Positions 1,311 to 19,482 of a DNA stretch of 64,000 bases are shown piece by piece. The stretch spans positions 62,001 through 126,000 of the IMG/VR virus record IMGVR_UViG_3300028735_000003; one strand, given 5' to 3'. Positions within the stretch are counted from its first letter, which is position 1. Each line of letters starts with the position of its first letter. Below the pieces are notes generated by a model, which saw only the letters and a list, made by a program, of their open reading frames with translations, did not search any database and had not been told where the DNA came from. A program made the translations under genes and the position numbers.

Positions 1311-1311
1311 T

Positions 1312-5535: not shown

Positions 5536-5718
5536 TTAATTAAGAATTCCAATTTGATACCTTGCGTCAAATTCATCAACGTTCCATCCACATGATTCAA
5601 TGAATGCCTCTACTCGAATAAGAAAGTCATTCAATGTCTCGTCCTTGTCAAGACCTTTCGCATACATCTTTCCAACTTCTAGGTCTACAATCTCAAACGG
5701 AATCTTATTAGAAACCAT
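5536..5718 (-). CDS. hypothetical protein, tandem paralog 1
   Basis: MVSNKIPFEIVDLEVG...; AAGGAG RBS; near-copy of 5822..5995. Confidence 0.7.
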   Translation of the reverse strand: MVSNKIPFEIVDLEVGKMYAKGLDKDETLNDFLIRVEAFIESCGWNVDEFDARYQIGILN

Positions 5719-5821
5719 GATTGATCTCCTTTATAGTTTCTTTATCCGTGTTTCATGATGGGTGCGGTAGATTACAGCACGACTGCAATAGTAGATTATT
5801 TCTTATGAAAAAGTAGGCCAC

Positions 5822-5995
5822 CTACAAAATTTGATACATTGCGTTAAATTCATCGACGTTCCATCCACAGGATTCAATGAATGCCCCTACTCGAATAAGA
5901 AGGTCATTAAACGTCTCGTTCTCGTAGAGACCTTCAGCATACATCCTTCCAACTTCTAGATATACAATTTCAAACGGAATCTTATGTGAAACCAT
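5822..5995 (-). CDS. hypothetical protein, tandem paralog 2 (57 aa, not in ORF track)
   Basis: Manual translation MVSHKIPFEIVYLEVGRMYAEGLYENETFNDLLIRVGAFIESCGWNVDEFNAMYQIL; AAGGAG RBS. Confidence 0.7.
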   Translation of the reverse strand: MVSHKIPFEIVYLEVGRMYAEGLYENETFNDLLIRVGAFIESCGWNVDEFNAMYQIL

Positions 5996-6183
5996 GACTT
6001 CTCTCCTTTATGGTTCCTTTATTCGTGTTTCATGATGGGTATAACAGATTATAGTATGACTGTAACAGCAAATTATTTCTTATGAAAAAGAAAGCACCCA
6101 AAAAACGAAAAAGAAAATACGATGATTACAGTTGAGCCAATTACTTACAATTGAACACACACCTATATATTTTAGTTACCACC

Positions 6184-6708
6184 CTAACTATTATCATAAA
6201 CATCTTCATTGTCTCGATATTCAACAGCGAACAGATCACAAGGATCTCCTTCGCCTGATTCTAGGCTACAACCAATTGAATTCAAGTCAATTGCAGCCTG
6301 TTCGTACCACAATTCATCTTGGTACGCCTCTTTTGAACCAATCCCTCCACAAACAGTACAAGACCTTTCGTATCTGTTTTTAGCAGAAGTACGAATCTTG
6401 GCATGACGAATAGAATACTCACGACCATTCTTGATAGACAAGCGCATAATTCGCTCAAAACGAGCCTTATTGCGCTTTCTGATCCTGGCCGATTTGTGAC
6501 CAGGAACCGTGCCAGTACCCCTACAACATGGACAATAATCAAGATTAGATGAAGCCAATGGCATGTAGTATTTACCGCTAGGCGTCAAAGCGAATACAGT
6601 TCCTAGAAAGGTCGAACGCTTCTGAACATTACCTTCATTCTGCCAATCTTCAGAATCCAAGTCTTTACGAATGTTTTCGAGTTCTTCTTGACTGAAGACA
6701 GTTTCCAT
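6184..6708 (-). CDS. protein with two CxxCxGxG zinc-binding motifs
   Basis: CPCCRGTGTV and CTVCGGIGS; start set at METVFS after GGGAG RBS. Confidence 0.65.
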   Translation of the reverse strand: METVFSQEELENIRKDLDSEDWQNEGNVQKRSTFLGTVFALTPSGKYYMPLASSNLDYCPCCRGTGTVPGHKSARIRKRNKARFERIMRLSIKNGREYSIRHAKIRTSAKNRYERSCTVCGGIGSKEAYQDELWYEQAAIDLNSIGCSLESGEGDPCDLFAVEYRDNEDVYDNS

Positions 6709-6736
6709 AATTAACTCCCGTTTAGTTTTGATACCA

Positions 6737-7261
6737 TTAATCTTCAATCGGGTCCTTAATGCCACATTTCCAACAATATGACTCGCCTTCAGATACCTTA
6801 GCGCCGCAAACCCTACATGGTACATAAATCTTCTTATAAATTGTAGATTGTTGTGTTGTTTGTTGCATAATTGCAGATTTATCAACAGTTGGTGCAATAA
6901 CTCCCATCAAAGAAACGTTTATTGCAACTGTGTTTTTCCTAGATAGATTCAACCAAATCGTATCATACTCTGCAAGAGCATTAAGATACCCTTTAACCGT
7001 CCTCTTGTCAATGTTTGACTTGATAGTCAAATAGTTATTATGCATAACATGAGTGGGATTATGCATTGATTCTTTGTGCATCACATTAAGAATTGTGAGT
7101 GAAGCAGCTTTCAATGCGTCATGCTCCTCTTGATATAGAAAAACATTGCATATTGCACTTTGCAAGTGGTTCTCTTGCAATACCCAAACCATCATGTAAG
7201 TCGTCCCTTCGTCTTTAAACTCATTCGAATTGTGTCTGTGTACCAGTACACATACACACAA
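6737..7261 (-). CDS. hypothetical protein with C-terminal double zinc ribbon (start uncertain)
   Basis: C-terminal CRVCG...CWKCG. Confidence 0.55.
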   Translation of the reverse strand: MCVCVLVHRHNSNEFKDEGTTYMMVWVLQENHLQSAICNVFLYQEEHDALKAASLTILNVMHKESMHNPTHVMHNNYLTIKSNIDKRTVKGYLNALAEYDTIWLNLSRKNTVAINVSLMGVIAPTVDKSAIMQQTTQQSTIYKKIYVPCRVCGAKVSEGESYCWKCGIKDPIED

Positions 7262-7428
7262 ACTCTATTAACTCTATTATATATCTGTAGATCTGTACAA
7301 TACAGTCAAATTACAACAGTAGCTTTTTCAGTCTCAATGAACTAGATAAGAATCTGAAGCGAAGTAAATCCATATCAATTTATTACATTCATAATCATTA
7401 CTTTAATATGTCACAAAAACATGTGACA

Positions 7429-7791
7429 TCATTCATGGCGTCCCCAACTGTCAATCATGTAGTCTTTTGCGCGCCTCTCATATTCTTGAACCTTCGCGCG
7501 GATGGAAGCTAGTTGCTTCTCTCCATCAGCAACCAATTCAGGATGAGTTACCTTCCATTCATCTATCTTTTCCTGAAGGTAAACTTCTGCTCTCTTAAGA
7601 AAAGTCACAAATGAATCGGCTGTCTGAACCGCAAATACAGACGCAGATATGGCAGAGTCTTCAACACCATTTGCCATATTCACTGCACATTGACCACACG
7701 CAGTTTCAGGAATCTTTGGACATTGCTGCTTTGTTGTACAACCGAATGCAGTAAATGTAATCAAAAACAAACAAGCTGACTTCATATACAT
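7429..7791 (-). CDS. putative lipoprotein
   Basis: MYMKSACLFLITFTAFGC lipobox-like signal; AAGGAG RBS. Confidence 0.6.
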   Translation of the reverse strand: MYMKSACLFLITFTAFGCTTKQQCPKIPETACGQCAVNMANGVEDSAISASVFAVQTADSFVTFLKRAEVYLQEKIDEWKVTHPELVADGEKQLASIRAKVQEYERRAKDYMIDSWGRHE

Positions 7792-7843
7792 GATCGACTC
7801 CTTGAATGGAAACTCCGTACAAATACAATCTTTGAATATAAGT

Positions 7844-8122
7844 CTAATATTGCTGCTTGTATCTCTTACGATAAATACGGACAATCTTTGACCTTAATAC
7901 ATCCTGTTTTGTAACAAGAATTTCCTCGCAGGATGATGGATGCCGGGTAATGTACCCTTTAAACCATCTAACATCCTCTGGTTCCATATAAACTGTACGA
8001 AGATCAACTAGAGAAGTAAACTCTACTTGACCATGATTGTTTCTAAACCATAGTTCTTTACCATCAACTACCAGCTTGATTCCATATACTATGGATTTTG
8101 AAAGTAATTTTCTAGCTTTCAT
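7844..8122 (-). CDS. hypothetical protein
   Basis: 92 aa ORF directly downstream of a tRNA-like element. Confidence 0.55.
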   Translation of the reverse strand: MKARKLLSKSIVYGIKLVVDGKELWFRNNHGQVEFTSLVDLRTVYMEPEDVRWFKGYITRHPSSCEEILVTKQDVLRSKIVRIYRKRYKQQY

Positions 8123-8134
8123 TTTTTTTTACCA

Positions 8135-8202
8135 GGTGCTTCATGACAGAATCGAACTGCCTTCTGCTGAATCCGCCGATTTATCCAATAATCTAATGAA
8201 AC
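8135..8202 (-). ncRNA. tRNA-like element with collapsed anticodon arm
   Basis: Acceptor GTTTCAT/ATGAAGC+ACC, T arm GGCAG-TTCGATT-CTGTC, D arm GAT...ATC; only 16 nt between D and T arms (about 23 expected). Confidence 0.65.
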
Positions 8203-8395
8203 AATAATTAGACATACATATAACTATGTATCATGTTGTCATCCATCATTATCATGCGTATATGAGTGATCAATATAATACCACCAACACAATATCACGA
8301 GAAACATATCAATTTGTATTTTTTTGGTAAAATATATTCAAATGTATTCCTGGCTTATTATTTGGAAGAAGCTCATGAGAAAACCAGGGAAATCA

Positions 8396-8626
8396 TTAGC
8401 TTCTGGTTACGCTTGATATTTTTCTTACAAGCATAGCTTCATAGAGAAACTCTCCTTCATTTCTTATGAAATTTCCACGACTATCAAAACATCTTTTTAC
8501 TTCTTTCTCAAACCATCTAGGAAACTTCTCTTCCTTACATAGTTGAGAAAGCCATTCGTTAGCTTTGAATTCACCATACTCTTGGTATACGTATCTATAT
8601 TTAATTAGAATGTCCAATATGTTCAT
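8396..8626 (-). CDS. hypothetical protein
   Basis: 76 aa ORF. Confidence 0.55.
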   Translation of the reverse strand: MNILDILIKYRYVYQEYGEFKANEWLSQLCKEEKFPRWFEKEVKRCFDSRGNFIRNEGEFLYEAMLVRKISSVTRS

Positions 8627-8635
8627 GGTAATCCA

Positions 8636-8830
8636 TTATTTTGTGCGCCAAAAACATTTTCCGAATTGGATAATGCTTCCTTTGTACGTTTCTTTGCACT
8701 TGTCACGAATTGCCTTAAATGAAGTTCCAACCCATAGCTTCACAGATACATTAGACCCTGGTCCTTCAATCGTTACAAAACAGCAACACTCTCGACTAGG
8801 AGAATAAATAGGTGTGCCATACTTGGACAT
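8636..8830 (-). CDS. hypothetical protein
   Basis: 64 aa; a partial degraded copy of its 3' half lies at about 9815-9880. Confidence 0.5.
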   Translation of the reverse strand: MSKYGTPIYSPSRECCCFVTIEGPGSNVSVKLWVGTSFKAIRDKCKETYKGSIIQFGKCFWRTK

Positions 8831-8898
8831 TGTTCGATTCCTTTTATAATTAGCAATGTACTCATACTAATTGCTGTATCTTATTACATTGCTAAATA

Positions 8899-9372
8899 TC
8901 ACTTCAAAGGTCTCCCACAGTGTAGACTCCAACAATGAGTTGCGTCTACATCGTTCATCTTACCACAATGTGGACATGGAATTTCTTTTTTATCAGAAAC
9001 TTGATCCGGCTTCCCAATTCCATTGTCCAGTCTATGATAGACTCTTCGTTTATATATGTATATACAAATCCAATTATAATGATTGAATCTTGCATCACTT
9101 CCTATGCTATCGAATTTATCAATAGCATCATAATAACTGCCACTATCTAATAACTTTTTGACCTCGACGTAAATTTTATGTTCCTCCACATTTGAAGGAT
9201 TACCAAAGTCATTCTGAATGAACCAATAACTGATTTCATCAATAGCTATGAATATGGCTGATTCTTTTGTATCACAGACAAAAAAACGATTGTTTTTATC
9301 GTCCTTAGTTACAATTTCCATAATATACACATTATCAATATCAATTGGTGAAATGCTCATCATTTCCTCCAA
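8899..9372 (-). CDS. hypothetical protein with C-terminal zinc ribbon, paralog 1
   Basis: Ends CPHCGKMNDVDATHCWSLHCGRPLK, identical tail to 9916..10380. Confidence 0.7.
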   Translation of the reverse strand: MEEMMSISPIDIDNVYIMEIVTKDDKNNRFFVCDTKESAIFIAIDEISYWFIQNDFGNPSNVEEHKIYVEVKKLLDSGSYYDAIDKFDSIGSDARFNHYNWICIYIYKRRVYHRLDNGIGKPDQVSDKKEIPCPHCGKMNDVDATHCWSLHCGRPLK

Positions 9373-9505
9373 CTTTATCTGTTTAGGATAACGCAGTATC
9401 CTAAAACTACGAATACTGATAATGTTATTTCACAAATTACATTGATATCAATTCCAGTCATCATATGACATTTTGATTTCAATATCCACAGACACTTATG
9501 CCATT

Positions 9506-9745
9506 TCAACGTGCAGACTTACTATTCCGAACCTTAAAAAGGTCCAACTTATTCTGAAGCTTTTGGGTCTGCTTCTCCAATCGCTTCTTTTGATTAGCCA
9601 ATTGTTGTTGGCGTACAATCTGTTGCCGCAAAAGTCTACGTAGCAACTTCAATTTCCGAATCTCTTGCTTAATTGGTTCAAAATTATTATCACACATAGA
9701 GTCACCAGTAGTAGTTACATCGACCATATAATTAGACGCCTTCAT
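9506..9745 (-). CDS. basic coiled-coil hypothetical protein
   Basis: 79 aa, Q/K/R/L-rich helix. Confidence 0.55.
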   Translation of the reverse strand: MKASNYMVDVTTTGDSMCDNNFEPIKQEIRKLKLLRRLLRQQIVRQQQLANQKKRLEKQTQKLQNKLDLFKVRNSKSAR

Positions 9746-9915
9746 TGTCTTCTCCCTTGATCTGCTATCTTGAACTTTGTTTATAAGACAATCCTAACGA
9801 TTATTCTCTTATTTTGTACGCCAGAAACATCTTCCGAATTGAATAATATTTTACTTTGTACGTTTCTTTGCACTTATTCTACAATTAGAAATGTATCCGC
9901 ACTAATTGATGAATG

Positions 9916-10380
9916 TTAATACTTTAAGGGTCTCCCACAATGTAGACTCCAACAATGAGTCGCGTCTACATCGTTCATTTTACCACAATGTGGGCATGGA
10001 ATTTCTTTTTTGCCAGAAATTTGTTCTGGCTTCCCAATTCCATTATTCACATGCTTATGAAAAACTTTCTTTCTATAGATAGATATAAAAATCAAACTCT
10101 CATTCAAATTGAGAGTACCATTGTCTTCTATATTATCGAATTCATCAATAGCACAGTAATAATTTCCATTGTCCACCAGTTCTTTGATCCTGGTGTAAAT
10201 TTCATGTTCCTTCACATTCGAAGGATCATCAAAATCATTATTTTTGAACCAATTGTTCATTTCATCAATAGCAGCGAATATTGCAGACTCTTCTGTATCA
10301 TGAATAAAGTGATTGCTATCATCACCGCACTCATCTACAACCTCCAGAACATACACATGATCAATTGTGTAGGTATCCAT
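9916..10380 (-). CDS. hypothetical protein with C-terminal zinc ribbon, paralog 2
   Basis: Start set at MDTYTIDHV after GGAG; aligns along its length with 8899..9372. Confidence 0.7.
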   Translation of the reverse strand: MDTYTIDHVYVLEVVDECGDDSNHFIHDTEESAIFAAIDEMNNWFKNNDFDDPSNVKEHEIYTRIKELVDNGNYYCAIDEFDNIEDNGTLNLNESLIFISIYRKKVFHKHVNNGIGKPEQISGKKEIPCPHCGKMNDVDATHCWSLHCGRPLKY

Positions 10381-10397
10381 TTTTTTCTCCAACTTTA

Positions 10398-10476
10398 GGT
10401 GCTTCGTAGCAGAGTCGAACTGCTTTCTACGGATTGAAAAGTAAATCCGCCGATAGATACAATAGTCTAACGACAC
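10398..10476 (-). ncRNA. tRNA-like element with 12-nt anticodon loop
   Basis: T arm AGCAG-TTCGACT-CTGCT, 3' ACGAAGCACC, stem GCGGA/TCCGT enclosing TTTACTTTTCAA; paralogous to 8135..8202. Confidence 0.6.
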
Positions 10477-10579
10477 AATAATACATATAGCTATATTATT
10501 ACAAGCGCAGCTTCATATGAATTACCATTTATCTATAAGATAACCCCAACGATTATTCCGAAAATTATGTTCCTTTACT

Positions 10580-11509
10580 TTAGTAAATAGTAGGATCTTC
10601 TGTTCCACATTTCCAGCAAGGTGTTTCACCGGCATTCAAACCTGTCCCACAACACTTGCACGGATGGTCATTCTTGTTCTCGACTACAAAAGTTTCTTGG
10701 TGAAAATAGTTGTTTTCACACTCTTCACAATCGTCACAATCACAATCGTCACCATCACAATAGTCACAATCACAATCGTCACCATCACAATCATTACAAG
10801 AAGAATTCAGCATGTCTGACTGACTCTCATGAACATATACAGACCATTTCGTATGAAACTGCCCAGATTCATCTAGATTGAAAAGGTACCTGTTGATACC
10901 TTTTTCCTCCAACTCTCTGGCAATATCTTCTGGTGAGTCTGTCTGACCAAAATGTAACCCGGTTGTATATGAATTCTTATTCACTCTAATATACCCATAG
11001 TCAGACGGATCAAGATCTTTGATAGGATTTGCCTTCTGCGAATTCCCCTCAAATTCCTCAAAATAAGAGGAGGCGTCTTCTTTTATACATTCAACACACG
11101 ACAAATCACAGTCGATGTCTGAAAAATGATATGAAGGTGTCCAACCATATGAATCAGGTTGAATTCGAATGAGCTTTGAACAGTGATCACAAACTGACCA
11201 CTCATCATCCCACTCGCACTCAATACCCATTTTTTCAAATAGCTTGCCAACTCTATTTGGCAAGTCACTTACAAGCTTTCGCGTATGCGTATTGTAATCA
11301 TAACTGGTGATTGTATTCCAATCACCAGTCGCTACTATTCCGCATGCTGGAGTGTCATATCCAGGTTCAGCATAACCATGATGGTGTAGCCGAATCCCTT
11401 CAATTCTATTCTCAACAGAAATAGAAATAGATTTCGCCATATTCTTGGCGATATTCAGAATACGTTCTGCTCGAAGAGCAATGTTCTTGTTTCGTTCGTC
11501 AGAGTTCAT
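10580..11509 (-). CDS. hypothetical protein with Asp/Cys-rich repeat and C-terminal zinc ribbon
   Basis: 309 aa; CNDCDGDDCDCDYCDGDDCDCDDCEEC; ends CKCCG...CWKCG. Confidence 0.75.
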   Translation of the reverse strand: MNSDERNKNIALRAERILNIAKNMAKSISISVENRIEGIRLHHHGYAEPGYDTPACGIVATGDWNTITSYDYNTHTRKLVSDLPNRVGKLFEKMGIECEWDDEWSVCDHCSKLIRIQPDSYGWTPSYHFSDIDCDLSCVECIKEDASSYFEEFEGNSQKANPIKDLDPSDYGYIRVNKNSYTTGLHFGQTDSPEDIARELEEKGINRYLFNLDESGQFHTKWSVYVHESQSDMLNSSCNDCDGDDCDCDYCDGDDCDCDDCEECENNYFHQETFVVENKNDHPCKCCGTGLNAGETPCWKCGTEDPTIY

Positions 11510-11517
11510 GTTTTCGC

Positions 11518-11898
11518 CTACTCTTTTGTGTGCCCATCAAACCAAGGACCATACAATCTGGTCCTTCTCTTTCCTGCCGCTTTTGTGCAGGTACTTGAAG
11601 AGGTTTCCGGATCACTGCAATGCTCTTTCGCCTCTTCAAGAGTAAGTCCACGCTTTATTGTGATATTCCTGCAACTTTTGAAAAAAACTCGGAAAACTTT
11701 GTATGTTTCCATTGTGTACCCATCAAACCAAGGACCATACAATCTGGTCCTTCTCTTTCCTGCCGCTTTTGTGCAGGTACTTGAAGAGGTTTCCGGATCA
11801 CTGCAATGCTCTTTCGCCTCTTCAAGAGTAAGTCCACGCTTTATTGTGATATTCCTTCTACTCTCGAAAAAAAATCTAACGACTTTGTATGTTTCCAT
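11518..11898 (-). CDS. hypothetical protein made of two fused copies of a 62-aa unit
   Basis: 186-bp direct repeat (offset 11533 vs 11719). Confidence 0.7.
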   Translation of the reverse strand: METYKVVRFFFESRRNITIKRGLTLEEAKEHCSDPETSSSTCTKAAGKRRTRLYGPWFDGYTMETYKVFRVFFKSCRNITIKRGLTLEEAKEHCSDPETSSSTCTKAAGKRRTRLYGPWFDGHTKE

Positions 11899-11911
11899 GT
11901 TTTACCTGCTT

Positions 11912-12355
11912 TTATGGGTGGCAGAAACTATTTGTAGACTTGTTCTTTCGAACATATCGCCGCCAAAAATTATTGATCTTTCGGTCCAAATCAGATTTGT
12001 CCCGAAACTCATATCTACCATTTTCGTCCCAAAATTCAACAAAATCATCTACACTTGGGTGCAACCAAGAATGACAAGATGTCTTGCGATTCTCCTTATT
12101 ACATTTCAATAACTCCATACGAGTCACACCACTAGGTGATTCAGAGTCGAAAAACTTACCATACTGGTATGCAAACGCATGTGTATCATTGGAGTACAAT
12201 GAAACATCCTTATATAGGATGTACGCAATATACGCCCAACGATAACAATCCCCTTTGTTTATCTCTGATTCCATACCAACCATCTCTGGGAAAAATTCAC
12301 GAGTAATCAACTTCCCATCGATTTTACCTGGAAGTTTACCTGGAAGTTTACGCAT
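11912..12355 (-). CDS. hypothetical protein
   Basis: 147 aa; AGGAG RBS. Confidence 0.65.
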   Translation of the reverse strand: MRKLPGKLPGKIDGKLITREFFPEMVGMESEINKGDCYRWAYIAYILYKDVSLYSNDTHAFAYQYGKFFDSESPSGVTRMELLKCNKENRKTSCHSWLHPSVDDFVEFWDENGRYEFRDKSDLDRKINNFWRRYVRKNKSTNSFCHP

Positions 12356-12385
12356 GAATGTTCTCCTAGTTTTATGGTTTTGCTA

Positions 12386-12619
12386 TCAATATGGTTGATA
12401 ACAATTCTTCCATTCTTCAGAAGAATTGTACCAACAATACCACGTTCTATTACCACTTGGAGAAATTGTCTCGGCATACCAATTATGTTTATATACCAGT
12501 TGCAGCATTAGTCCAGATCCACTTGGAAGTGAATCCATACCATGCTGCTTTAGCATCCACTTTAGCCGTAAATGCACATGTGCAATGTGCATAAATAATT
12601 CGATCTGAGAAGAATCCAT
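12386..12619 (-). CDS. hypothetical protein
   Basis: 77 aa; AAGG upstream. Confidence 0.5.
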   Translation of the reverse strand: MDSSQIELFMHIAHVHLRLKWMLKQHGMDSLPSGSGLMLQLVYKHNWYAETISPSGNRTWYCWYNSSEEWKNCYQPY

Positions 12620-12622
12620 ACC

Positions 12623-12844
12623 TTATGTTGCCTTCTCAAATTTAGAGAAATATTCAATAATTCCTGTGCGAATCGCATTCACAGTTGCCGCATTCCACCT
12701 GTAGCTTCTTGCATCATATTCCAGATTTGCATACGCAACTATCAAATTTTGATTCACACCAACCGTAAACAGGAAGTTTCGGACAGCTACTGCCTTCACT
12801 CCCCTTCTCGACGCCAATTGCTCAATTCTCTCTGTTGTCAACAT
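12623..12844 (-). CDS. hypothetical protein
   Basis: 73 aa MLTTERIEQLASRRGVK. Confidence 0.6.
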   Translation of the reverse strand: MLTTERIEQLASRRGVKAVAVRNFLFTVGVNQNLIVAYANLEYDARSYRWNAATVNAIRTGIIEYFSKFEKAT

Positions 12845-12880
12845 TATTATACCTATAAAAGCATAAAAAAGAGAGAATAC

Positions 12881-13282
12881 CTATTCATATCTTGGTCGAA
12901 GCGTTGGACGCGCTGGATGATCTTCCAGGCAGACGATTATATCCATGCCTCCCAAAACTGAATAAATGTTCCCATTACGCCTGTGCCCATACAAATCTTC
13001 TAGATATCTACGAAACCAATCAACCTTTTCAGGATTGATGGGTTGCAACTCATAATCCCACTTGTCCGGACCGGCAACCGAAATTGCCTTTACCGGAATT
13101 GAGGCAACAGGGTTACGGTGGTTGTACCACCAACCACCTTCTTCCGGTCCGCCATAATGCCGGGTAATCTCATATGCATTCACATACATAAGAGATTCTG
13201 CACCGGGTTTTACATACCCTTCAGGCGGATAATCATCATCATATTGATGATCATAATCACAATCACAATCATAATCGCACAT
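12881..13282 (-). CDS. hypothetical protein
   Basis: 133 aa, YGGPEEGGWWY motif; GGAG RBS. Confidence 0.7.
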   Translation of the reverse strand: MCDYDCDCDYDHQYDDDYPPEGYVKPGAESLMYVNAYEITRHYGGPEEGGWWYNHRNPVASIPVKAISVAGPDKWDYELQPINPEKVDWFRRYLEDLYGHRRNGNIYSVLGGMDIIVCLEDHPARPTLRPRYE

Positions 13283-13301
13283 TATCGTTTCTCCATATCA
13301 G

Positions 13302-13352
13302 TGCGGTTCAAAAGTCTACACCTGTTTTACTCCACCGTTCCTGGAAACCAAA
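13302..13352. repeat. 51-bp exact repeat, copy 1 (copy 2 at 14497-14547)
   Basis: TGCGGTTCAAAAGTCTACACCTGTTTTACTCCACCGTTCCTGGAAACCAAA identical at both sites, non-coding. Confidence 0.9.
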
Positions 13353-13436
13353 CAAAACAAACATGTATAGACCCGTGAGGCGAACCCCAAAATGGCGGGA
13401 ACCCAATCCAATAGTCCCCCTTTGCATTAGACGTGG

Positions 13437-13602
13437 ATACCATAATCCAAACAAAGTTTGGACTGGTCTAGTCCCATACACACAATCTCTTATGTGTATG
13501 GGGACTGGTTTTACAAGAAAACAACATGATTCCAATACTAAACCAGCAAATATACCGGAATCTAAGTCTATGACAATGTTCAGAATGGTCCTGCCCATAC
13601 TG
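13437..13602. repeat. about 165-bp near-identical structured repeat, copy 1 (copy 2 at 13871-14036)
   Basis: Direct comparison, about 2 differences in the non-coding part; contains several hairpins. Confidence 0.9.
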
Positions 13603-13768
13603 AAACATTGTCTCTTACAACAACAAGAATCTCATCCATGTCCTCAACATGGATATTTTTTCCGCGCATGTATTCAAGGACATCCTCTTTCTTCTGGAGA
13701 CAAAGACTGTCAGGAGCCTTGCATGAAACCGTAATATCGCCGTCAAACGATACACAGATAAGTACCAT
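13580..13768 (-). CDS. 62-aa hypothetical protein, paralog 1 of 3
   Basis: MVLICVSFDGDITVSCKAPDSL...DEILVVVRDNVSVWAGPF; AAGGAG RBS. Confidence 0.65.
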   Translation of the reverse strand: MVLICVSFDGDITVSCKAPDSLCLQKKEDVLEYMRGKNIHVEDMDEILVVVRDNVSVWAGPF

Positions 13769-14013
13769 GATCGTTCTCCTTCCACGCTGAAAACTAGACA
13801 TATATGTATAGACCAGTGGGGAGACCCCCAAAATGGCGGAGACTAAATCTAGTATCACTTTTATACATAAATACCATAATCCAAACAAAGTTTGGACGGG
13901 TCTAGTCCCATACACACAATCTCTTATGTGTATGGGGACTGGTTTTACAAGAAAACAACATGATTCCAATACTAAACCAGCAAATATACCGGAATCTAAG
14001 TCTATAACAATGT

Positions 14014-14205
14014 TCAGAATGGTCTTGTCCATACTGTCACATTGTCATCCACAATAACAAGGATTTCATCAAGGTCATCCGTACTTACGCCTCTTTCTGC
14101 ACAGAGGAATTGAATTACATCCTCCTTTTTCTGGAAACGGAGGCTATACGGAGCCTTACACGAAAAGGTAGCATTATGGTCAAAAGACACACCGACGATA
14201 ACCAT
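14014..14205 (-). CDS. 63-aa hypothetical protein, paralog 2 of 3
   Basis: ...SCKAPYSL...DEILVIVDDNVTVWTRPF; AGGAG RBS. Confidence 0.65.
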   Translation of the reverse strand: MVIVGVSFDHNATFSCKAPYSLRFQKKEDVIQFLCAERGVSTDDLDEILVIVDDNVTVWTRPF

Positions 14206-14231
14206 GACAACTCTCCTATTGTTTGTAAAGT

Positions 14232-14426
14232 TCAGAATGGTCCTGACAATACTGTAATATTGTCGTTGACAATGACCAGAATCTCATCCGTGTCTTCCAG
14301 TGTAACATTATTTGTACGCAAATACTCAAGGATAGCCTCTTTCTTCTGAAGATCCTGAAGACAAAGACTGTCCGTAGCTTTGCATGAAACTGTGGCATCG
14401 CCATCAAGCTCATAAATGAGAACCAT
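14232..14426 (-). CDS. 64-aa hypothetical protein, paralog 3 of 3
   Basis: ...SCKATDSL...DEILVIVNDNITVLSGPF; AGGAG RBS. Confidence 0.65.
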   Translation of the reverse strand: MVLIYELDGDATVSCKATDSLCLQDLQKKEAILEYLRTNNVTLEDTDEILVIVNDNITVLSGPF

Positions 14427-14682
14427 AATATCTCTCCTAGTTGGAATATAAACAAATGTTTGGAAACAGGTTCGACCGCCTATATGAGCTTTTCATTGCG
14501 GTTCAAAAGTCTACACCTGTTTTACTCCACCGTTCCTGGAAACCAAATATATTGTCTTTCAAATTGGAAGGAACACGGTCAGGCTCGATATCGATTCGAC
14601 CGTTTCCCACGTATATTATACGTGTGCATTCTCCCAAGATCACGCATGCAAAATCTTGGGAATAAGCCTATCACATTCCTAG

Positions 14683-14745
14683 TGGGACCAGCCGGATTCG
14701 AACCGACATTTATTCCTTTACCCTAATCATTAGGGCAATGGTCCC
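14683..14745 (-). ncRNA. tRNA-like element lacking an anticodon arm
   Basis: Perfect acceptor GGGACCA/TGGTCCC+A, D-like arm GCCC...GGGT, T arm GTCGG-TTCGAAT-CCGGC; only 12 unpaired nt (AAAGGAATAAAT) between D and T arms. Confidence 0.7.
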
Positions 14746-14824
14746 AAAAGTACATGAACCTATAAGCTTCGGAAGAAAGGGGAATGAAACGGTTCTTATT
14801 CCATTCCCACACACCTACTATGTA

Positions 14825-15205
14825 CTACTTATCTTCCCGCTGGTCGGACCAGCGGGACACTCCGCCACCCTTTCCCTTTCCAATATGGAAAAGGGCGCCG
14901 GATTCACGGGCTCCGGCACGGTCCCGAACATAATTCTGAACTTTTTCAGAAAGAATTCGGAAGTTTTCCGGCTGAACGTTCAGCCTTTGGAGCGAATAGT
15001 TCACCAGGGCAGGCATATTGATCCTAGCCCCAGGGAACTGATCGAAGACAGCATTGACCGCGGCTCCAACCGCTTCATTTTCAGTTTCCATTTCAGCTTG
15101 AAAAGCCAAAAGGTCCTTGGCAAACTTCGCACAAGTAGCATCGAGGTCGATGCTGCCGTTCCCAGCACGCACAACGTAAGTATTGAGGTTGATCGCAGTA
15201 TTCAT
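14825..15205 (-). CDS. hypothetical protein
   Basis: Start set at MNTAINLNTY after GAAGGAG; GC-rich codon usage; GKGKGGGV motif. Confidence 0.75.
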   Translation of the reverse strand: MNTAINLNTYVVRAGNGSIDLDATCAKFAKDLLAFQAEMETENEAVGAAVNAVFDQFPGARINMPALVNYSLQRLNVQPENFRILSEKVQNYVRDRAGARESGALFHIGKGKGGGVSRWSDQREDK

Positions 15206-15430
15206 GACGAACTCCTTCTCTACGATGAATCTGGCGCTTGCCATGCTGAATCTTGACTCAATTCAAGATTCATTGACTCGCGCCTTCCTAGCACTTCCGC
15301 CCGAACGCCGTTACATGATGGGAACGTCAACCCGTTCCCGTTGCCTTGCCTTGCCTTGCGTTCGTCGCACCTTGGCGTTGTCTATGTTTCATGATGGGAT
15401 CGTTATGCGCCGCATATAATAAGGTTTCGT

Positions 15431-15746
15431 AGCAAAAACTATGCCAACTATACTTCGGCACGATTCTTGCTACGCACGAACACATGACCAATTTGGCATA
15501 TACTTTGCTTCTTTGCAATATACATGCCGTTTTGTATGGCACGATGTTTGCACTTTGCAAACGTTATGCCACCATATATCGTGACACTACATTGCCATAT
15601 ATTGTCATATATTGCCAACAAATATGGCACGAAGTTTGCACCTTTGCAAATGTTATGCCATCAATCGTGAAACTACATTGCTATATATTGTCATATAGTG
15701 TCACGCAAACATGGCACGACGTTTGCACTTTGCAAACGCTATGCCA
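15431..15746. promoter_or_regulatory. sigma54 -24/-12 cluster 1 (10 sites, both strands; includes an 87-88 bp tandem repeat)
   Basis: GG-N10-GC 16-mers at 15431(-), 15456(+), 15494(+), 15514(-), 15537(+), 15556(-), 15625(+), 15645(-), 15712(+), 15731(-), e.g. TGGCACGATGTTTGCA. Confidence 0.85.
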
Positions 15747-16206
15747 CATGATAATTCACCTCTTGTGAAAAGAGGTGCTGGTAAGTGCGGGCGAATAAAA
15801 ATCCGCCATAGTTTATCGTGAACTAGATAACGAAAAACTCTTACTGAGAGAAAGAGGTTCAATCCTCTTCTTCACCCCAGTCCTCGTTTTTCCAGTTTTT
15901 CATAGAATCCTTATGAGCTTTACTCATGCGTCGGGGCTTTTGTGCTTCGCCCCTTGCGACTGAAAGCGCAAAAAGATTGCGCCGACGTTTACGCGGTAAT
16001 TCGATTCTAAAAGACCGATCGCCTTTATGAGTAGCCATTTATCTACTCCTTTTCAAACAAGATTGGGACGCTAAAGCGCCCCAACACTACACCTTACTTC
16101 AAGGAAGTGACGGTTACCAGAACGAACCACAAACTCACTCAAATCGATCTTTCTCATGGGCTTACCCTTTCCTTCAAATCCTGTTTCATGATGGGCTGAT
16201 GTACAA

Positions 16207-16791
16207 TCAGCCCCGCGAGAACGCCACCTTGGATTGACGCACCTTCACGCCGAATCCAAGGTTGCCGTTAGACGGATGGCTCACTTTATGCACAGCCATC
16301 CGCGGCTTCTCAAAAAGACGAGAAAACGATTCATCGCGGCGAATAATATCCGTCGCGTGTTCGGGGTTAGCACACCTGTTCGAATGTACTTCCCCGAAAT
16401 AATCGGGGGGAGACTCAAACAGTCGGCGGTCAATCCAATCAATCGCCCTTTGATAAAGGGCAAACTCCTTTTCCAAAGCTTTACCCTGTTCATCACGGGC
16501 AACCTCCCCCGTGCCACGACGAATCGTGGCAACAAAGGGATATTCCACCTTTCTCGGCTTGTTCATGCCCGTATGGGCACTAGCCAAGATATGATCAAGA
16601 ACGACCCTTTTCAATTCAGTCAAAGCTGGCGTGGGAAGCAACTCCCCACTTTCCAGCTTCTTTACAATTGAAGCCGTCGCGTAAGACACTTCCGAATCCG
16701 AAGCGAGAAGGTACTCACGATGCGCTTGAAAAAAAGCAAGCGCACTAACCTTTGGAGAATTGGCTTTGTGCAGAAGCCTACGCGGTGTCAT
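16207..16791 (-). CDS. hypothetical protein
   Basis: 194 aa, GGAAGGGAG RBS, junction motif upstream. Confidence 0.7.
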   Translation of the reverse strand: MTPRRLLHKANSPKVSALAFFQAHREYLLASDSEVSYATASIVKKLESGELLPTPALTELKRVVLDHILASAHTGMNKPRKVEYPFVATIRRGTGEVARDEQGKALEKEFALYQRAIDWIDRRLFESPPDYFGEVHSNRCANPEHATDIIRRDESFSRLFEKPRMAVHKVSHPSNGNLGFGVKVRQSKVAFSRG

Positions 16792-16843
16792 GGCTAACTC
16801 CCTTCCTTTCCCTCTATCCCACTTCCGTGTTTAATGATGGGAA

Positions 16844-17026
16844 CTACTTGCTCCCACCAAAGAGCAGTCCGACGATCATGACCAGTGCACTAGCGCCGAC
16901 CGACCATCGGACAGATACTCCTTCAAAGTACTGTGCCATGATGGGAAACTGTGGGATCAGGAAAAAATTGATGGCACAAAAAATGCATGCGGACAAAATC
17001 GCCCAAAGTACCAACAGCTTCCACAT
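16844..17026 (-). CDS. small two-helix membrane protein
   Basis: MWKLLVLWAIL...; GGAGG RBS; two hydrophobic segments. Confidence 0.65.
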   Translation of the reverse strand: MWKLLVLWAILSACIFCAINFFLIPQFPIMAQYFEGVSVRWSVGASALVMIVGLLFGGSK

Positions 17027-17196
17027 ATCCGCCTCCAACTGTTTTATGATGGGTAGAACGTTCTACCCTTATTGCAACAGCACATTGACGTTCACACCTT
17101 ACTAGGTGTTTCCTAACGCCCGTCAAGTTGCGTTGCACCACCCACAATGTATTGTTTCATGATGGGATCGTTGCAATACATATAAAAGATATAACT

Positions 17197-17437
17197 TGGC
17201 ATGCTTATTGCAGACGGTTCTAACGTAGCACGCGAATTGCTACGTTGCAAAGCTCATGCCATCATATTCACGTGCAAGTATCGTACCATATACAAGTTAT
17301 GCAAGTATCATACCATATGCAAATATCATGCCAAATAATTATTCATTAGTTTCATTGATATGATAAACTTGGATATAATGAACTTTTCGTGAAAAACTTG
17401 GCTGGTATATCGTTTGCACCTTGCAAATTCAATGCCA
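17197..17437. promoter_or_regulatory. sigma54 -24/-12 cluster 2 (7 sites plus 1 variant)
   Basis: 17197(+), 17246(-), 17273(-), 17300(-), 17318(-), 17403(+), 17422(-); AG-N10-GC variant at 17226(+). Confidence 0.85.
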
Positions 17438-17505
17438 ACCTGAACAAAGAAACACAAAACTCCCGCTCATCAATTAGATGGCGAGATCAATTAGTAACGG
17501 GTTAG

Positions 17506-17841
17506 TTACACGTTGCGCTTACTCAACCAAGCAGCGCAACTGCCTTCACGGATGAGACGAACAATCTCATCCGTCAGAGGTGACCCGACTTCGGTATGAT
17601 ATCCTTGCATGGCAAGGATATCAACCTCCCGAGACGTAATCTCGGGAGAATACGTATTCCTTTCGAATTCGCGCAAGGCTTCACGCGCCTTGCGCGCGTT
17701 TTCCCGCGTTCCAATAAGCGCGGACTCAGCCCTTTCAAGGGCTTTCCTCGCCCGAGCTACGGCTTCTCGGGCGAACGCCTCATCCTCGGCTGCCTGCACG
17801 CAGGCAGCCTTGAGCCCTTCTAGAGTAGGTCTTATATTCAT
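17506..17841 (-). CDS. coiled-coil hypothetical protein
   Basis: Start set at MNIRPTL; Ala/Arg/Glu-rich helix. Confidence 0.65.
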   Translation of the reverse strand: MNIRPTLEGLKAACVQAAEDEAFAREAVARARKALERAESALIGTRENARKAREALREFERNTYSPEITSREVDILAMQGYHTEVGSPLTDEIVRLIREGSCAAWLSKRNV

Positions 17842-17922
17842 TTTATGCCTTCTTCGGTGTTGTGTTAGCGGCACCTTGACGCCAACTATGTTTCATGATG
17901 GGACGCGAACACCTGTTTTTCA

Positions 17923-18021
17923 TGGCACACACTTTGCTACTTTGCAAACAATATGCCTACCAAAACACAATGCAAGCAATTGACTTGACAATTGCTTGCA
18001 CTTACTAGCACGCTTCTTGCT
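17923..18021. promoter_or_regulatory. sigma54 cluster 3 (2 sites plus 1 variant) and a 12-bp inverted repeat
   Basis: 17923(+) TGGCACACACTTTGCT, 17943(-) AGGCATATTGTTTGCA, variant 18006(+); TGCAAGCAATTG-N6-CAATTGCTTGCA at 17971-18000. Confidence 0.75.
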
Positions 18022-18830
18022 TATCCTCCGCCCCCGCACGCTTCGTAGCGCGCTTCAAGCTCCGACCAGTTGTCGAAGTCAAGAATTCTTCTAATCTCGC
18101 GAGCCCTTGCATGCTCAAGGGCAGCTTTCATGGCGAAAACTCGCCATTCAGTTTCGGCGACGGTAGCATCATCTACCGTGCCTTCGGCGCGCAATTCACG
18201 CGCCAATTCCCGCTTGACACGCGCATCGATGACGAATTCATCGCGCGCATGTTCCGCGGTTACAAGCGCCGATACAAGTGACCGACGCATCTTGCTGGCG
18301 CGGCTTCCCACGCCAGCCGATCCAAAGACAACTGCCCTACCATGCCGGTTGGCATGGTCATCGGGCACAACATTAGGGTGACGAATCTCGAACATAATGA
18401 TCCGGCAGACGTCAAGCAAGGTACCTGTCGCCATATCTGGCATGAGGTATGCCACGCGATGGTCCTTAGTTTGACGAAGCCAAGCAATAAAGCCGTTACA
18501 ATAAGCGCGCAATTCCGTTGAAGTAGGATTCCGCCGTTGCGGCATCCCCTTTTCGTCACAATAAGCAATCTTTCCGTTGATGGCGGAATGGAATTCATCC
18601 GGTGACAACGGAATTGCGGAAGGGAATTCAGCATTAGCTGAATTCCAACCAGACTTAGACTTACGTGTCCCTTTACAATCAGAACACGACTTAGACTTCA
18701 CGGAACGCGGCTTAGTTGTAGTCGCGTCCGCGGACGAATCTGGAACCATTGCGGAGATAGAATTCTCCGCAATGTAGGTCGAAGCCAATCCTGCGAGAAA
18801 ACTATCAACAATAGACCTAGACATGGCCAA
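18021..18830 (-). CDS. hypothetical protein
   Basis: 269 aa, AAGGGAG RBS, GC-rich codons. Confidence 0.7.
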   Translation of the reverse strand: MAMSRSIVDSFLAGLASTYIAENSISAMVPDSSADATTTKPRSVKSKSCSDCKGTRKSKSGWNSANAEFPSAIPLSPDEFHSAINGKIAYCDEKGMPQRRNPTSTELRAYCNGFIAWLRQTKDHRVAYLMPDMATGTLLDVCRIIMFEIRHPNVVPDDHANRHGRAVVFGSAGVGSRASKMRRSLVSALVTAEHARDEFVIDARVKRELARELRAEGTVDDATVAETEWRVFAMKAALEHARAREIRRILDFDNWSELEARYEACGGGG

Positions 18831-18930
18831 CTCCCTTCTTTCGGGGGTATTCCCTCACTGTTGCGCCACAATTGTTTCATGATGGGTTTACATTATAGGT
18901 AGGTTGAATCCAACAATAATGAAACGAAGA

Positions 18931-19064
18931 CGGTATAGCAGTTGCTATTAGCAAAAACCATACCTGTTCTAAAACTGAATTGGTACTAATCATGCTATAG
19001 CAAAAATAATGCCACCTCTCAAAGAGACTCGGCACAACAATTGCTCCTTACAATATTCATGCCA
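18931..19064. promoter_or_regulatory. sigma54 cluster 4 (5 sites plus 1 variant)
   Basis: 18931(+), 18950(-), 18981(+), 18999(-), 19030(+); GG-N10-GT variant at 19049(-). Confidence 0.8.
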
Positions 19065-19347: not shown

Positions 19348-19482
19348 TGGCATAGGAAATGCTACTTGCAAAGAGCGTACCATCGTCGATTGAACTATTG
19401 GACGATGGCATGAGTATTGCTAATTGCAAGGAATATGCCAGTGAAGATTCTGAACAAGAGCCGCGTTGGCACGCGATTTGCC
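19348..19482. promoter_or_regulatory. sigma54 cluster 5 (5 sites)
   Basis: 19348(+), 19367(-), 19406(+), 19425(-), 19467(+) TGGCACGCGATTTGCC. Confidence 0.8.

What the first reader, a model, noticed from the sequence alone, without database searches (positions are those of the whole stretch)
5749..18886. 14-nt gene-junction motif CCCATCATGAAACA (10 copies), often closing a variable hairpin that contains the upstream stop codon
Seen (plus strand TGTTTCATGATGGG): exact at 5749, 6026, 15385, 16182, 17153, 17889, 18873; variants at 15309, 16828, 17040. All are in one orientation and upstream of minus-strand ORFs. In four copies the CCC is the 3' base of a hairpin with unrelated sequence: GGGAACG-GGTTGA-CGTTCCC, GGGCTGAT-TGTAC-ATCAGCCC, GGGAGC-AAGTA-GTTCCC, GGGTAGAA-CG-TTCTACCC. 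In the first three the upstream ORF's stop lies inside the hairpin. The copies at 15385, 17153, 17889 and 18873 directly follow sigma54 clusters. Established: hairpin plus a 3' ...GAAAC tail is the architecture of Cas6-cut CRISPR repeats (AUUGAAAC handle), and phage solitary repeat units can act as RNA anti-CRISPRs; integron cassettes also carry a recombination site at each gene junction. Inference: an RNA processing or antitermination signal, a crRNA-handle mimic, or a cassette recombination site.
Basis: partly seen in the sequence, partly recalled or inferred. Interest (0 to 1): 0.8.

Follow-up and report, generated by a model that had tools for sequence, protein, structure and literature searches.

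The report
Gene-junction signal of a huge-phage clade
The 14-base motif is real: it is this phage's version of a short, one-directional signal (shared core CCCAT) that sits just before most small genes in one region of a group of uncultured giant phages, most likely a phage-specific gene-start (promoter) cassette and not a CRISPR mimic.

Summary
CCCATCATGAAACA (minus strand) has 7 exact and 3 near copies, all in one orientation. They lie 13-48 nt upstream of start codons that have a Shine-Dalgarno (SD, ribosome-binding) sequence. An eleventh match (16932) lies inside an ORF and is chance. The window is bases 62001-126000 of a 354-kb IMG/VR phage contig, and the motif is confined to about 13 kb of that contig.

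Relatives were found through two conserved genes of unknown function in this region. Close relatives keep the motif at every equivalent junction. Distant relatives each carry their own very abundant, strand-specific junction motif with the same core: TCCCATCGGTCAA, CCCATC-YR-GTCAC, CCCATCGGGAA, CTCCCATTCAC, tCCCATC. These occur 17-77 times per 8-20 kb.

The ATG, the GAAAC tail and the hairpin are therefore features of this lineage only. That removes the CRISPR-handle, leader-peptide and integron readings.

All lineages also carry clusters of sites matching the sigma54 promoter consensus upstream of the motif-gene runs. In one pair of relatives, homology blocks end at the motif far more often than chance.

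Best reading (confidence 0.4): a compact promoter-type regulatory cassette recognised by a phage-specified transcription factor, analogous to the T4-type promoter-stem-loop cassettes (PeSLs). Main rival (0.3): a sequence-specific RNA processing or binding site on sigma54-driven polycistronic transcripts. Mapping RNA 5' ends would decide.

The parts
18873..18886 (-). Motif copy 1, exact. Follows sigma54-like sites; 48 nt upstream of the gene A start (gene A 18021-18824).
   Evidence: It is a 21-nt island of identity inside a diverged flank versus L123.
17889..17902 (-). Motif copy 2, exact. Follows a sigma54-like palindrome; upstream of gene B (17506-17841).
   Evidence: Conserved in L123 and L126.
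17153..17166 (-). Motif copy 3, exact. Follows five sigma54-like sites (three of them match the strict TGGCA-N6-TTGC pattern) and opens a 113-nt leader unit.
   Evidence: In the alignments the leader unit differs from L123 and L126 at only a few positions.
17040..17053 (-). Motif copy 4, variant CCCATCATAAAACA. Preceded by a hairpin at 17051-17068; 13 nt upstream of gene C (16844-17026).
   Evidence: A variant with the same ATA is kept in L123, L126 and L127 (CCCATCATAAAACG).
16828..16841 (-). Motif copy 5, variant CCCATCATTAAACA. Preceded by a hairpin at 16839-16855 that holds gene C's stop codon; upstream of gene D (16207-16791).
   Evidence: The copy is canonical (ATG) in L126 and L127.
16182..16195 (-). 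Motif copy 6, exact. Preceded by a hairpin at 16193-16213 that holds gene D's stop codon; upstream of the gene E remnant (16071-16157).
15385..15398 (-). Motif copy 7, exact. Follows a cluster of sigma54-like sites (four strict matches) and opens a 76-nt leader unit.
15309..15322 (-). Motif copy 8, variant CCCATCATGTAACG. Preceded by a hairpin at 15320-15339; upstream of gene G (14825-15205).
   Evidence: The same variant is kept in L126 and L127.
6026..6039 (-). Motif copy 9, exact. Belongs to a 277-nt tandemly duplicated cassette (motif, SD, 57-aa gene 5822-5995, terminator). No sigma54-like site nearby.
   Evidence: family D1.
5749..5762 (-). Motif copy 10, exact. Lies about 50 nt after an intrinsic-terminator-like hairpin (5813-5825), upstream of a 60-aa paralogue (5536-5718).
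15431..15760 (.). Context: cluster of TGGCA-N6-TTGC (sigma54 -24/-12-like) sites, several as inverted pairs, upstream of copy 7. Similar clusters lie at 17245-17452, 17907-17960, 18940-19030 and 19390-19485.
   Evidence: 17 sites, all between 15.4 and 19.5 kb. The cluster is 95-98% identical to L126. Such sites are present in all related loci.
17969..18002 (-). Context: intrinsic-terminator-like hairpin closing the gene A unit. Others lie at 16062-16085, 14780-14808 and 5813-5825.

Best explanation
The motif is the window lineage's form of a compact (11-21 nt), strictly directional cis-element. Its core CCCAT(C/T) is shared by a clade of uncultured huge phages, and its 3' half differs by lineage. 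It sits between the upstream stop codon and the downstream SD of most small genes, and some non-coding units, in one plastic region of genes with no known relatives.

I read it as the recognition element of a phage-specified transcription-initiation system: a phage RNA polymerase, or a sigma-like factor that needs no -35 element. Under this reading each gene carries its own promoter cassette on top of the sigma54-type promoter clusters and intrinsic terminators that the host polymerase would use. Because the same short sequence flanks every gene, it would also act as a microhomology for cassette gain, loss and exchange.

Shown here: the anatomy, conservation, strand bias, position, family-wide core and breakpoint enrichment. 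Inferred: that the element is read as DNA by a transcription protein, and that transcripts start at or just after it.
For: 1. Real and constrained. There are 10 copies against 0.66 expected. Every copy is kept in the 73-79%-identical relatives L123, L126 and L127. One copy is an island of identity within a diverged flank.

2. Family-wide. Loci found through gene D homologues carry tTCCCATCGGTCAA 28 times in 11.8 kb (L128), CCCATC 77 times on + against 2 on - (L130), CTCCCATTCAC 43 times (L131), CCCATC-YR-GTCAC in 59 unique copies (L133, L135) and CCCATCGGGAA 17 times (L136). L128, L134 and L137 share the same motif. L128 has no blastn similarity to the other two, and L134 and L137 share only three short blocks. 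A conserved core plus a lineage-specific part is the pattern of promoters read by phage-encoded polymerases (T7, T3, SP6; from my own knowledge).

3. Position. 55-67% of copies lie 24-70 nt before an SD+ATG start, against 8-22% for random positions, in the window, L126, L128, L134 and L131; the enrichment is weaker in L130, L133 and L135. No -35-like block is conserved up to -45. In L133 and L135 an invariant purine lies 6 nt after the GTCAC block, where a start site would fall.

4. Parallels with T4-type PeSL cassettes (PMC2839356): the order stop codon, cassette, SD, start; location in plastic regions of genes without homologues; stem-loops that overlap the element in some copies; a copy in the linker between the two domains of gene D in L133 and L135; and 7 of 38 internal homology-block ends at the motif in both L133 and L135, where motifs with a 5-nt margin cover about 3.7% of the sequence.

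5. The cassettes at 5749 and 6026 have no sigma54-like site, and one follows a terminator. Something in or next to the motif must start transcription there, or the terminator leaks.

6. The motif is confined to about 13 kb of a 354-kb genome, as expected for one temporal class of genes.
Against: No RNA polymerase or sigma gene was seen in the window, and the rest of the genome could not be read. The sigma54-like clusters plus terminators already account for transcription of most units, so a second promoter type is not required. The element is GC-rich and has no obvious AT-rich segment to melt. In a few copies the SD abuts the motif (17040 in the window; L133 12757 and 14036), so a start site would have to lie within or at the edge of the motif. 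Arrays of 7-8 copies spaced 90-190 nt apart, around conserved and apparently structured non-coding units, are explained at least as well by RNA processing. No transcript ends are known.
Confidence: 0.4

Rival explanations
1. An RNA-level punctuation signal. Sigma54-driven polycistronic transcripts carry the motif in front of each cistron and each small-RNA unit. A sequence-specific protein, most likely a phage-encoded endoribonuclease or RNA-binding protein, cuts or binds there. This would yield single-gene mRNAs and small RNAs with uniform 5' ends, and in this lineage upstream pieces that end in a flush hairpin.
For: Sigma54-like clusters and terminators already define host-type transcription units. 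Nearly every cluster is followed by a motif copy before the first gene, followed by long motif-gene runs without other signals. The motif presses against upstream stop codons (34 copies at 0-10 nt) but almost never overlaps the ORF end (2 copies). In the window the hairpins occur only at internal copies that have transcribed RNA upstream, and each ends exactly at the motif's CCC. Arrays of copies flank conserved non-coding units, including tRNA-like elements. All copies are on the transcribed strand.
Against: No structural or accessibility signal surrounds the motif in any lineage, and the hairpin is not general. A full, conserved copy lies inside the gene D coding sequence in L133 and L135, where cleavage would destroy the message. 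No Rfam family or ribozyme matches. No complementary guide-like sequence is present in the loci. The cassettes at 5749 and 6026 lack any recognisable upstream promoter. To my knowledge, no phage endoribonuclease with a linear site of about 13 nt repeated at each gene is known.
Confidence: 0.3
2. A DNA operator for a phage regulator, for example a roadblock repressor that shuts the region off later or an accessory activator of the sigma54 promoters, rather than a promoter itself.
For: The copies are highly invariant. They lie 45-95 nt downstream of the last sigma54-like site of each cluster. The core is conserved and the other half is lineage-specific.
Against: Strict co-orientation with genes (for example 77 against 2 in L130) is not needed for an operator. 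Copies occur before genes far from any promoter. There is no dyad symmetry beyond TCATGA in this lineage and none in the others.
Confidence: 0.1
3. A translational element in the 5' UTR, such as an enhancer, a standby site or a re-initiation signal, possibly linked to the phage-encoded translation proteins.
For: The motif lies just upstream of the SD and just after stop codons. Relatives encode ribosomal L7/L12-like domain proteins in the same region, and the window encodes a release factor.
Against: The distance to the start codon varies from 13 to several hundred nt. Many copies precede non-coding units. The AUG inside the window's motif is absent in the other lineages and in two of the window's own copies, and the short ORFs it opens are not conserved in L123.
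Confidence: 0.07
4. A dedicated site-specific recombination site (integron-like) or a crRNA-handle or anti-CRISPR RNA mimic.
For: Homology-block ends are enriched at the motif in L133 versus L135. A motif-gene-terminator cassette is duplicated 9 kb from the main cluster. The window lineage has a hairpin plus a ...GAAAC tail in 4 copies.
Against: There is no inverted core-site pair, and no integrase was found among the window's Pfam hits. The only indel between the window and L126 is not at the motif. The GAAAC tail and the hairpin are lineage-specific. No array of the motif at CRISPR spacing exists in GTDB genomes. The hairpin stems are unrelated to each other in sequence.
Confidence: 0.05

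Closest known systems
PeSL (promoter-early stem-loop) cassettes of T4-type phages RB49 and phi1 (Arbiol et al. 2010, PMC2839356)
   Same: About 50 short repeated intergenic cassettes per genome. Their layout is stop codon, cassette, SD, start, in front of genes without homologues in plastic regions. Stem-loops can overlap the element. Recombination between cassettes shuffles genes. PeSL-like sequences are found between the two halves of a gene that is split in some phages. All of these have a counterpart here.
   Different: PeSLs contain a full host sigma70 -35/-10 promoter plus an AT-rich upstream region. This motif matches no host promoter consensus, has no -35 block, is GC-rich, and coexists with separate sigma54-type clusters. 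Promoter activity is not shown here.
Promoters of phage-encoded RNA polymerases (T7, T3, SP6 class) and the -35-less T4 late promoter read by gp55 (from my own knowledge)
   Same: Nearly invariant copies, all co-oriented with genes, placed just upstream of the SD. Related phages share a core and differ in a specificity part. The element is restricted to one class of genes.
   Different: The element is shorter (11-21 nt against about 23 nt for T7), is present before most genes rather than a subset, and has no AT-rich melting segment. No polymerase or sigma gene has been identified.
RNase III processing sites between T7 early genes, and Cas6-type cleavage of CRISPR repeats (from my own knowledge)
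   Same: A repeated signal at gene or unit junctions of a transcript made from clustered host promoters. In the window lineage, a hairpin lies directly 5' of the conserved tail.
   Different: Those sites are defined by structure (long duplexes, or a constant repeat hairpin). Here the signal is a linear sequence with no consistent structure.

Membership tests
CRISPR repeat / crRNA-handle mimic (solitary repeat, RNA anti-CRISPR) | Near-identity to the repeat of a CRISPR array in a host genome | tested here: not met
   Two motif copies at 40-70 nt spacing: 0 hits in 185,579 GTDB species genomes. The test covers only arrays whose repeat contains the 13-mer.
CRISPR repeat / crRNA-handle mimic (solitary repeat, RNA anti-CRISPR) | Constant repeat hairpin and a conserved ...GAAAC handle | tested here: not met
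   The four stems are unrelated in sequence and absent from 6 of the 10 copies. The homologous motifs of the other lineages lack GAAAC.
Integron attC cassette site | Imperfect inverted repeat with paired core sites (RYYYAAC ... GTTRRRY) at the 3' end of each cassette | tested here: not met
   It is a single linear motif. No inverted partner occurs on either strand near the copies.
Integron attC cassette site | Adjacent tyrosine-recombinase integrase | tested here: inconclusive
   No integrase appears among the 25 of 30 matched Pfam families that were listed for 56 window ORFs, nor in the per-protein scans. Only 64 kb of the 354-kb genome were read.
PeSL-type mobile regulatory cassette | Intergenic, between the upstream stop and the downstream SD, before genes without homologues in plastic regions | tested here: met
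PeSL-type mobile regulatory cassette | Contains a host sigma70-type promoter (-35, -10, AT-rich upstream element) | tested here: not met
   No conserved block is seen up to -45. sigma70-like matches in the region are at the shuffle level, 49 against 45.7.
PeSL-type mobile regulatory cassette | Mosaic or indel breakpoints between related phages at the cassettes | tested here: met
   7 of 38 internal HSP ends lie at the motif in both L133 and L135; motifs with a 5-nt margin cover about 3.7% of the sequence. Not seen in the one indel between the window and L126.
Promoter of a phage-encoded RNA polymerase or sigma-like factor | Phage gene for the polymerase or factor, and primary transcript 5' ends at the element | not testable with these tools
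   No such gene is in the window.
sigma54 (-24/-12) promoter | GG-N10-GC with a TGGCAC-N5-TTGCW context | tested here: not met
   The motif itself has no such pattern. The sigma54-like sites are separate elements upstream of it.
Intrinsic terminator | GC-rich hairpin followed by a U tract | tested here: not met
   The hairpins before the motif are followed by AUCAUGAAACA, not a U tract. The true terminator-like sites lie elsewhere.
Known structured RNA families or self-cleaving ribozymes (Rfam 15) | Match to a covariance model | tested here: not met
   Only a tRNA-like hit at 14683-14745, and none at the motif, even at E<=5.

The most novel reading that the evidence does not exclude
The motif family marks a phage-encoded, CRISPR-independent RNA punctuation system. 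A sequence-specific endoribonuclease, or an RNA-binding protein that co-evolves with the 3' half of the site, would dice sigma54-driven polycistronic early transcripts into single-gene mRNAs and a set of small structured RNAs (including tRNA-like RNAs lacking a D arm) across a whole clade of huge phages.
Probability: 0.28. Interest if true: 0.85.

Novelty: new variant of a known kind. Interest (0 to 1): 0.62.

Why it matters
If the motif is a promoter, it defines the recognition sequence, and its lineage-specific variants, of an unknown transcription system in a clade of uncultured 350-490-kb phages. That clade also appears to use host sigma54 promoters, which I did not find described for phage early regions in two literature searches. 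A set of orthogonal short promoters with a shared core would be a natural specificity series.

If it is an RNA signal, it would be a new kind of sequence-specific mRNA and small-RNA punctuation in phages.

In either case the motif is a practical marker. It delimits genes and non-coding units in regions where gene callers disagreed or called opposite-strand genes over apparent motif-SD-ATG starts. It marks cassette boundaries in a mosaic region. It also allows a covariation search for the protein that reads it.

Tried and rejected
- Leader peptide or leaderless-AUG reading. The ATG inside the motif opens ORFs of 1-60 codons that are not conserved in L123. Two window copies lack the ATG, and no other lineage's motif has one.
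- ECF-type -35 (TGAAAC) with a downstream -10. Three to four copies are too close to the SD and start codon, and no conserved -10 follows.
- Fixed spacing from the sigma54-like sites. By my estimate from the sequence, the distance from the predicted start site varies from about 22 to about 75 nt.
- Consistent RNA structure or accessibility. None was found. Hairpin enrichment is limited to this lineage.
- Guide-RNA pairing. No complementary site occurs on the transcribed strand of any locus, apart from a single near-complementary site at window 63305-63318, taken as chance.
- Rfam searches, including permissive ones. Nothing at the motif.
- Cultured or annotated relatives. None in INPHARED, by DNA or by gene D protein. 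None in GTDB genomes. No other IMG/VR contig carries the motif more than once, the sigma54 palindrome pattern more than once, or the TCCCATCGGTCAATT type.
- Function of the two conserved proteins. Pfam and PHROGs give nothing. AlphaFold models of gene A (mean pLDDT 75) and gene D (85.5) have no significant PDB fold match. The PspA/ESCRT-III-like helical-hairpin hits for gene A have E>1 and were not used.
- A second enriched upstream motif elsewhere in the window. None was found.
- Contig ends as RNA ends. Only L123 ends at a motif, and the other contigs do not.

Full report
**Observation**

The plus-strand 14-mer TGTTTCATGATGGG (CCCATCATGAAACA on the minus, coding strand) occurs exactly 7 times and with 1-2 mismatches 4 more times, all in one orientation. 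Dinucleotide-preserving shuffles give 0.66 matches. Ten copies lie in 5' untranslated positions of minus-strand genes, 13-48 nt before start codons with strong SD (ribosome-binding) sequences, or in longer leaders. The eleventh (16932) lies inside a 60-aa ORF and is not conserved in a close relative, so it is chance.

**Source**

The window is bases 62001-126000 of IMGVR_UViG_3300028735_000003, a 353,765-bp viral contig. It has no relative in GenBank phages. The window encodes collagen-like tail fibres, ThyA, DHFR, GMP reductase/IMPDH, a class-I release factor and split TnpB pieces.

The region carrying most copies (14-19 kb) has 45-47% G+C, against about 30% elsewhere. A complete IMG/VR scan for the motif with A/T flanks finds, in the whole contig, only the four such copies inside the window. 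The motif is therefore confined to about 13 kb of the 354-kb genome.

**Local anatomy**

TGGCA-N6-TTGC sites match the sigma54 -24/-12 consensus. There are 17 in the window, all between 15.4 and 19.5 kb, and several form inverted pairs. Together with terminator-like hairpins they form the following units:
- Promoter cluster, motif, gene A, terminator.
- Promoter, motif, gene B, and a hairpin with a T-rich tail that I read as a terminator (the scan did not list it).
- Promoter cluster, motif, 113-nt leader, hairpin+motif, gene C, hairpin+motif, gene D, hairpin+motif, gene E remnant, terminator.
- Promoter cluster, motif, 76-nt leader, hairpin+motif, gene G, terminator.

Two further copies (5749, 6026) belong to a tandemly duplicated 277-nt cassette of motif, SD, a gene of about 60 aa, and a terminator. 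This cassette has no sigma54-like site near it. None of the proteins has a Pfam or PHROG assignment.

**Close relatives**

Gene A has one 73%-identical homologue, on a 2.5-kb JGI contig (L123). Gene D has 78-79%-identical homologues; the contigs carrying one of them are L126 and L127. All equivalent motif copies are kept, including two of the three variants. The third variant is canonical in the relatives.

Upstream of gene A the flanks have diverged, and the motif is a 21-nt island of identity. The sigma54-like clusters and the tRNA-like region are 95-99% identical, more than the coding sequence at mostly 83-88%.

**Distant relatives: the key result**

Gene D has 33-46%-identical homologues on contigs of up to 490 kb, and gene A has distant homologues too. 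Their loci lack the window's 14-mer. Each instead has its own extremely abundant motif on the coding strand only, with the same core:

| Locus or loci | Motif | Copies |
|---|---|---|
| L128, L134, L137 | tTCCCATCGGTCAA(t) | 28 in 11.8 kb of L128 |
| L133, L135 | aCCCATC-YR-GTCAC-N5-cAA | 59 unique |
| L136 | CCCATCGGGAA | 17 in 7.8 kb |
| L131, L132 (57.5% G+C) | CTCCCATTCAC | 43 in 20.6 kb |
| L130 | tCCCATC | 77 on + against 2 on - in 20.6 kb |

L128, L134 and L137 share their 14-mer. L128 has no blastn-detectable similarity to the other two, and L134 and L137 share only three short blocks.

All loci also carry multiple TGGCA-N6-TTGC sites, where I estimate about 0.1 per locus by chance. 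Feature maps show sigma54-like clusters nearly always followed by a motif copy. After that come long motif-gene-motif-gene runs with few other signals. In L133 and L135 there are arrays of 7-8 copies spaced 90-190 nt apart around conserved non-coding units.

**What this excludes**

The ATG and the GAAAC tail are peculiar to the window lineage, so the leader-peptide, leaderless-AUG and crRNA-handle readings fail at family level. No array of the motif at CRISPR spacing exists in 185,579 GTDB genomes.

Hairpins ending at the CCC are enriched only in the window lineage: 4 of 11 matches against about 10% background, and at background rate elsewhere. There is no consistent structure or accessibility around the motif, no Rfam match and no complementary guide-like sequence. 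The motif has no inverted partner, so it is not attC-like. One copy per gene does not fit nut- or ops-type antitermination signals.

**Position statistics**

In the window, L126, L128, L134 and L131, 55-67% of copies lie 24-70 nt before an SD+ATG start, against 8-22% for random positions. The enrichment is weaker in L130, L133 and L135. Relative to the upstream ORF, 34 copies start 0-10 nt after the stop codon and only 2 overlap the last 13 nt of the ORF.

No upstream (-35-like) block is conserved. In L133 and L135 an invariant purine lies 6 nt after GTCAC. One full copy lies in frame in the linker between the two predicted domains of gene D in L133 and L135. It is conserved while its flanks differ.

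**Mosaicism**

Between L133 and L135, 7 of 38 internal homology-block ends fall within 5 nt of a motif copy in both genomes. Motifs with that margin cover about 3.7% of the sequence. Motif-bounded units are present in one genome and absent in the other. In the window lineage the only indel (gene E, 115 aa in L126 and a 28-aa remnant here) is not at the motif.

**Interpretation**

The element is a per-gene, directional signal with a conserved core and a lineage-specific half, recognised most likely by a protein. Two mechanisms fit.

*Promoter-type cassette read by a phage polymerase or a sigma-like factor that needs no -35 element (confidence 0.4).* Arguments for it:
- The pattern matches phage-specific promoters: near-invariant copies, co-orientation with genes, a shared core plus a specificity part, and restriction to one class of genes.
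- It matches T4-type PeSL cassettes point by point.
- The 5749 and 6026 cassettes are self-contained.
- A copy inside an ORF is tolerated.

*RNA processing or binding site on sigma54-driven polycistronic transcripts (confidence 0.3).* Arguments for it:
- The host-type signals already explain transcription.
- The motif abuts stop codons but avoids ORFs.
- Arrays of copies surround structured non-coding units.
- The hairpins in this lineage end flush with the CCC.

No tool available here can tell a primary RNA end from a processed one, so the choice rests on analogy. Operator, translational-element and dedicated recombination-site readings are less likely (0.1, 0.07 and 0.05).

**Trans-acting factor**

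It was not identified. AlphaFold models of the two conserved proteins (gene A mean pLDDT 75, gene D 85.5) have no significant PDB match. No polymerase or sigma gene lies in the window.

**Novelty**

The kind of element, a repeated regulatory cassette at phage gene junctions, is known. This family is new in three respects: the CCCAT core with lineage-specific halves, the absence of any host promoter consensus, and the coupling to sigma54-type clusters in an uncultured huge-phage clade. I did not find it described.

Noticed in passing
window 15431-15760, 17245-17452, 17907-17960, 18940-19030, 19390-19485; also L126-L137: There are 17 TGGCA-N6-TTGC (sigma54 -24/-12-like) sites, all within 4 kb. 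Many are inverted pairs whose -12 ends face each other across 1-4 nt; others are tandem. The clusters are 95-98% identical to L126, more than the coding sequence. Such sites recur in every related lineage. Use of sigma54-type promoters seems to be a trait of this clade, and the purpose of the palindromic pairing is unexplained.
   Followed up: partly
window 14683-14745 (-); L126 7185-7247: A tRNA-like element without a D arm (Rfam tRNA 33.8 bits; ARAGORN calls nothing). The surrounding 110-nt alignment block is 99% identical to L126. It sits in a 300-nt non-coding stretch that is 96-99% conserved. Related loci carry further T-arm-like (GGTTCGAnTCC) elements next to motif copies (L131 3270, 8456 and 20531; L133 9938).
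   Followed up: partly
window 13298-13352 and 14493-14547; 13300-14460: A 55-nt direct repeat, 98% identical, brackets a block of tandem paralogous small ORFs (about 63-150 aa, ending ...ILVIV.DN.TV...PF) with 219-nt and 126-nt repeats. Function unknown.
   Followed up: no
window 32134-33018 (-): A 294-aa class-I peptide-chain release factor homologue (PCRF 8e-37, RF-1 9e-34). The neighbouring 20-31 kb stretch has few long ORFs under the standard code, which raises the possibility of stop-codon reassignment in part of the genome. Not tested.
   Followed up: no
window 1276-1734 and 1789-2439 (+): A TnpB/IS605 OrfB-like gene in two consecutive ORFs (HTH_OrfB_IS605, OrfB_IS605 and Cas12f1-like TNB domains).
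   Followed up: no
window 16071-16157 (-) versus L126 5498-5845: Gene E is a 28-aa remnant here. The relative has a 115-aa gene, and the window lacks about 260 nt inside it. The N-terminus resembles that of gene G (…VVR.GN…), which suggests the two genes are paralogues.
   Followed up: partly
window 15343-15362 (-): A short CAAGG x3 run lies in the 76-nt leader between motif copies 7 and 8. The run is shorter in L126.
   Followed up: no
window 10710-10806: 15-nt periodic repeats (TCACAATCGTCACAA-like) inside the 309-aa ORF 10580-11509, which has no family match.
   Followed up: no
L134 3132-3716, L135 4168-4770, L137 1161-1712 and 5889-6188; L133 2455-3603: The motif-bearing regions of relatives encode proteins with ribosomal L7/L12 domains, and one HisKA/HATPase sensor kinase. 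The latter is notable because sigma54 activators are often partners of two-component systems.
   Followed up: no
L128 and L129, bases 1-30: Two independent Logan contigs start at the same base with GTTGACCTTTT tandem repeats. This may be a physical genome end next to the motif-rich region, or an assembly break.
   Followed up: no
window 25861-27669 (+): A 602-aa ORF with a weak LAGLIDADG-like domain (E 3.5e-4, below the Pfam cut-off).
   Followed up: no
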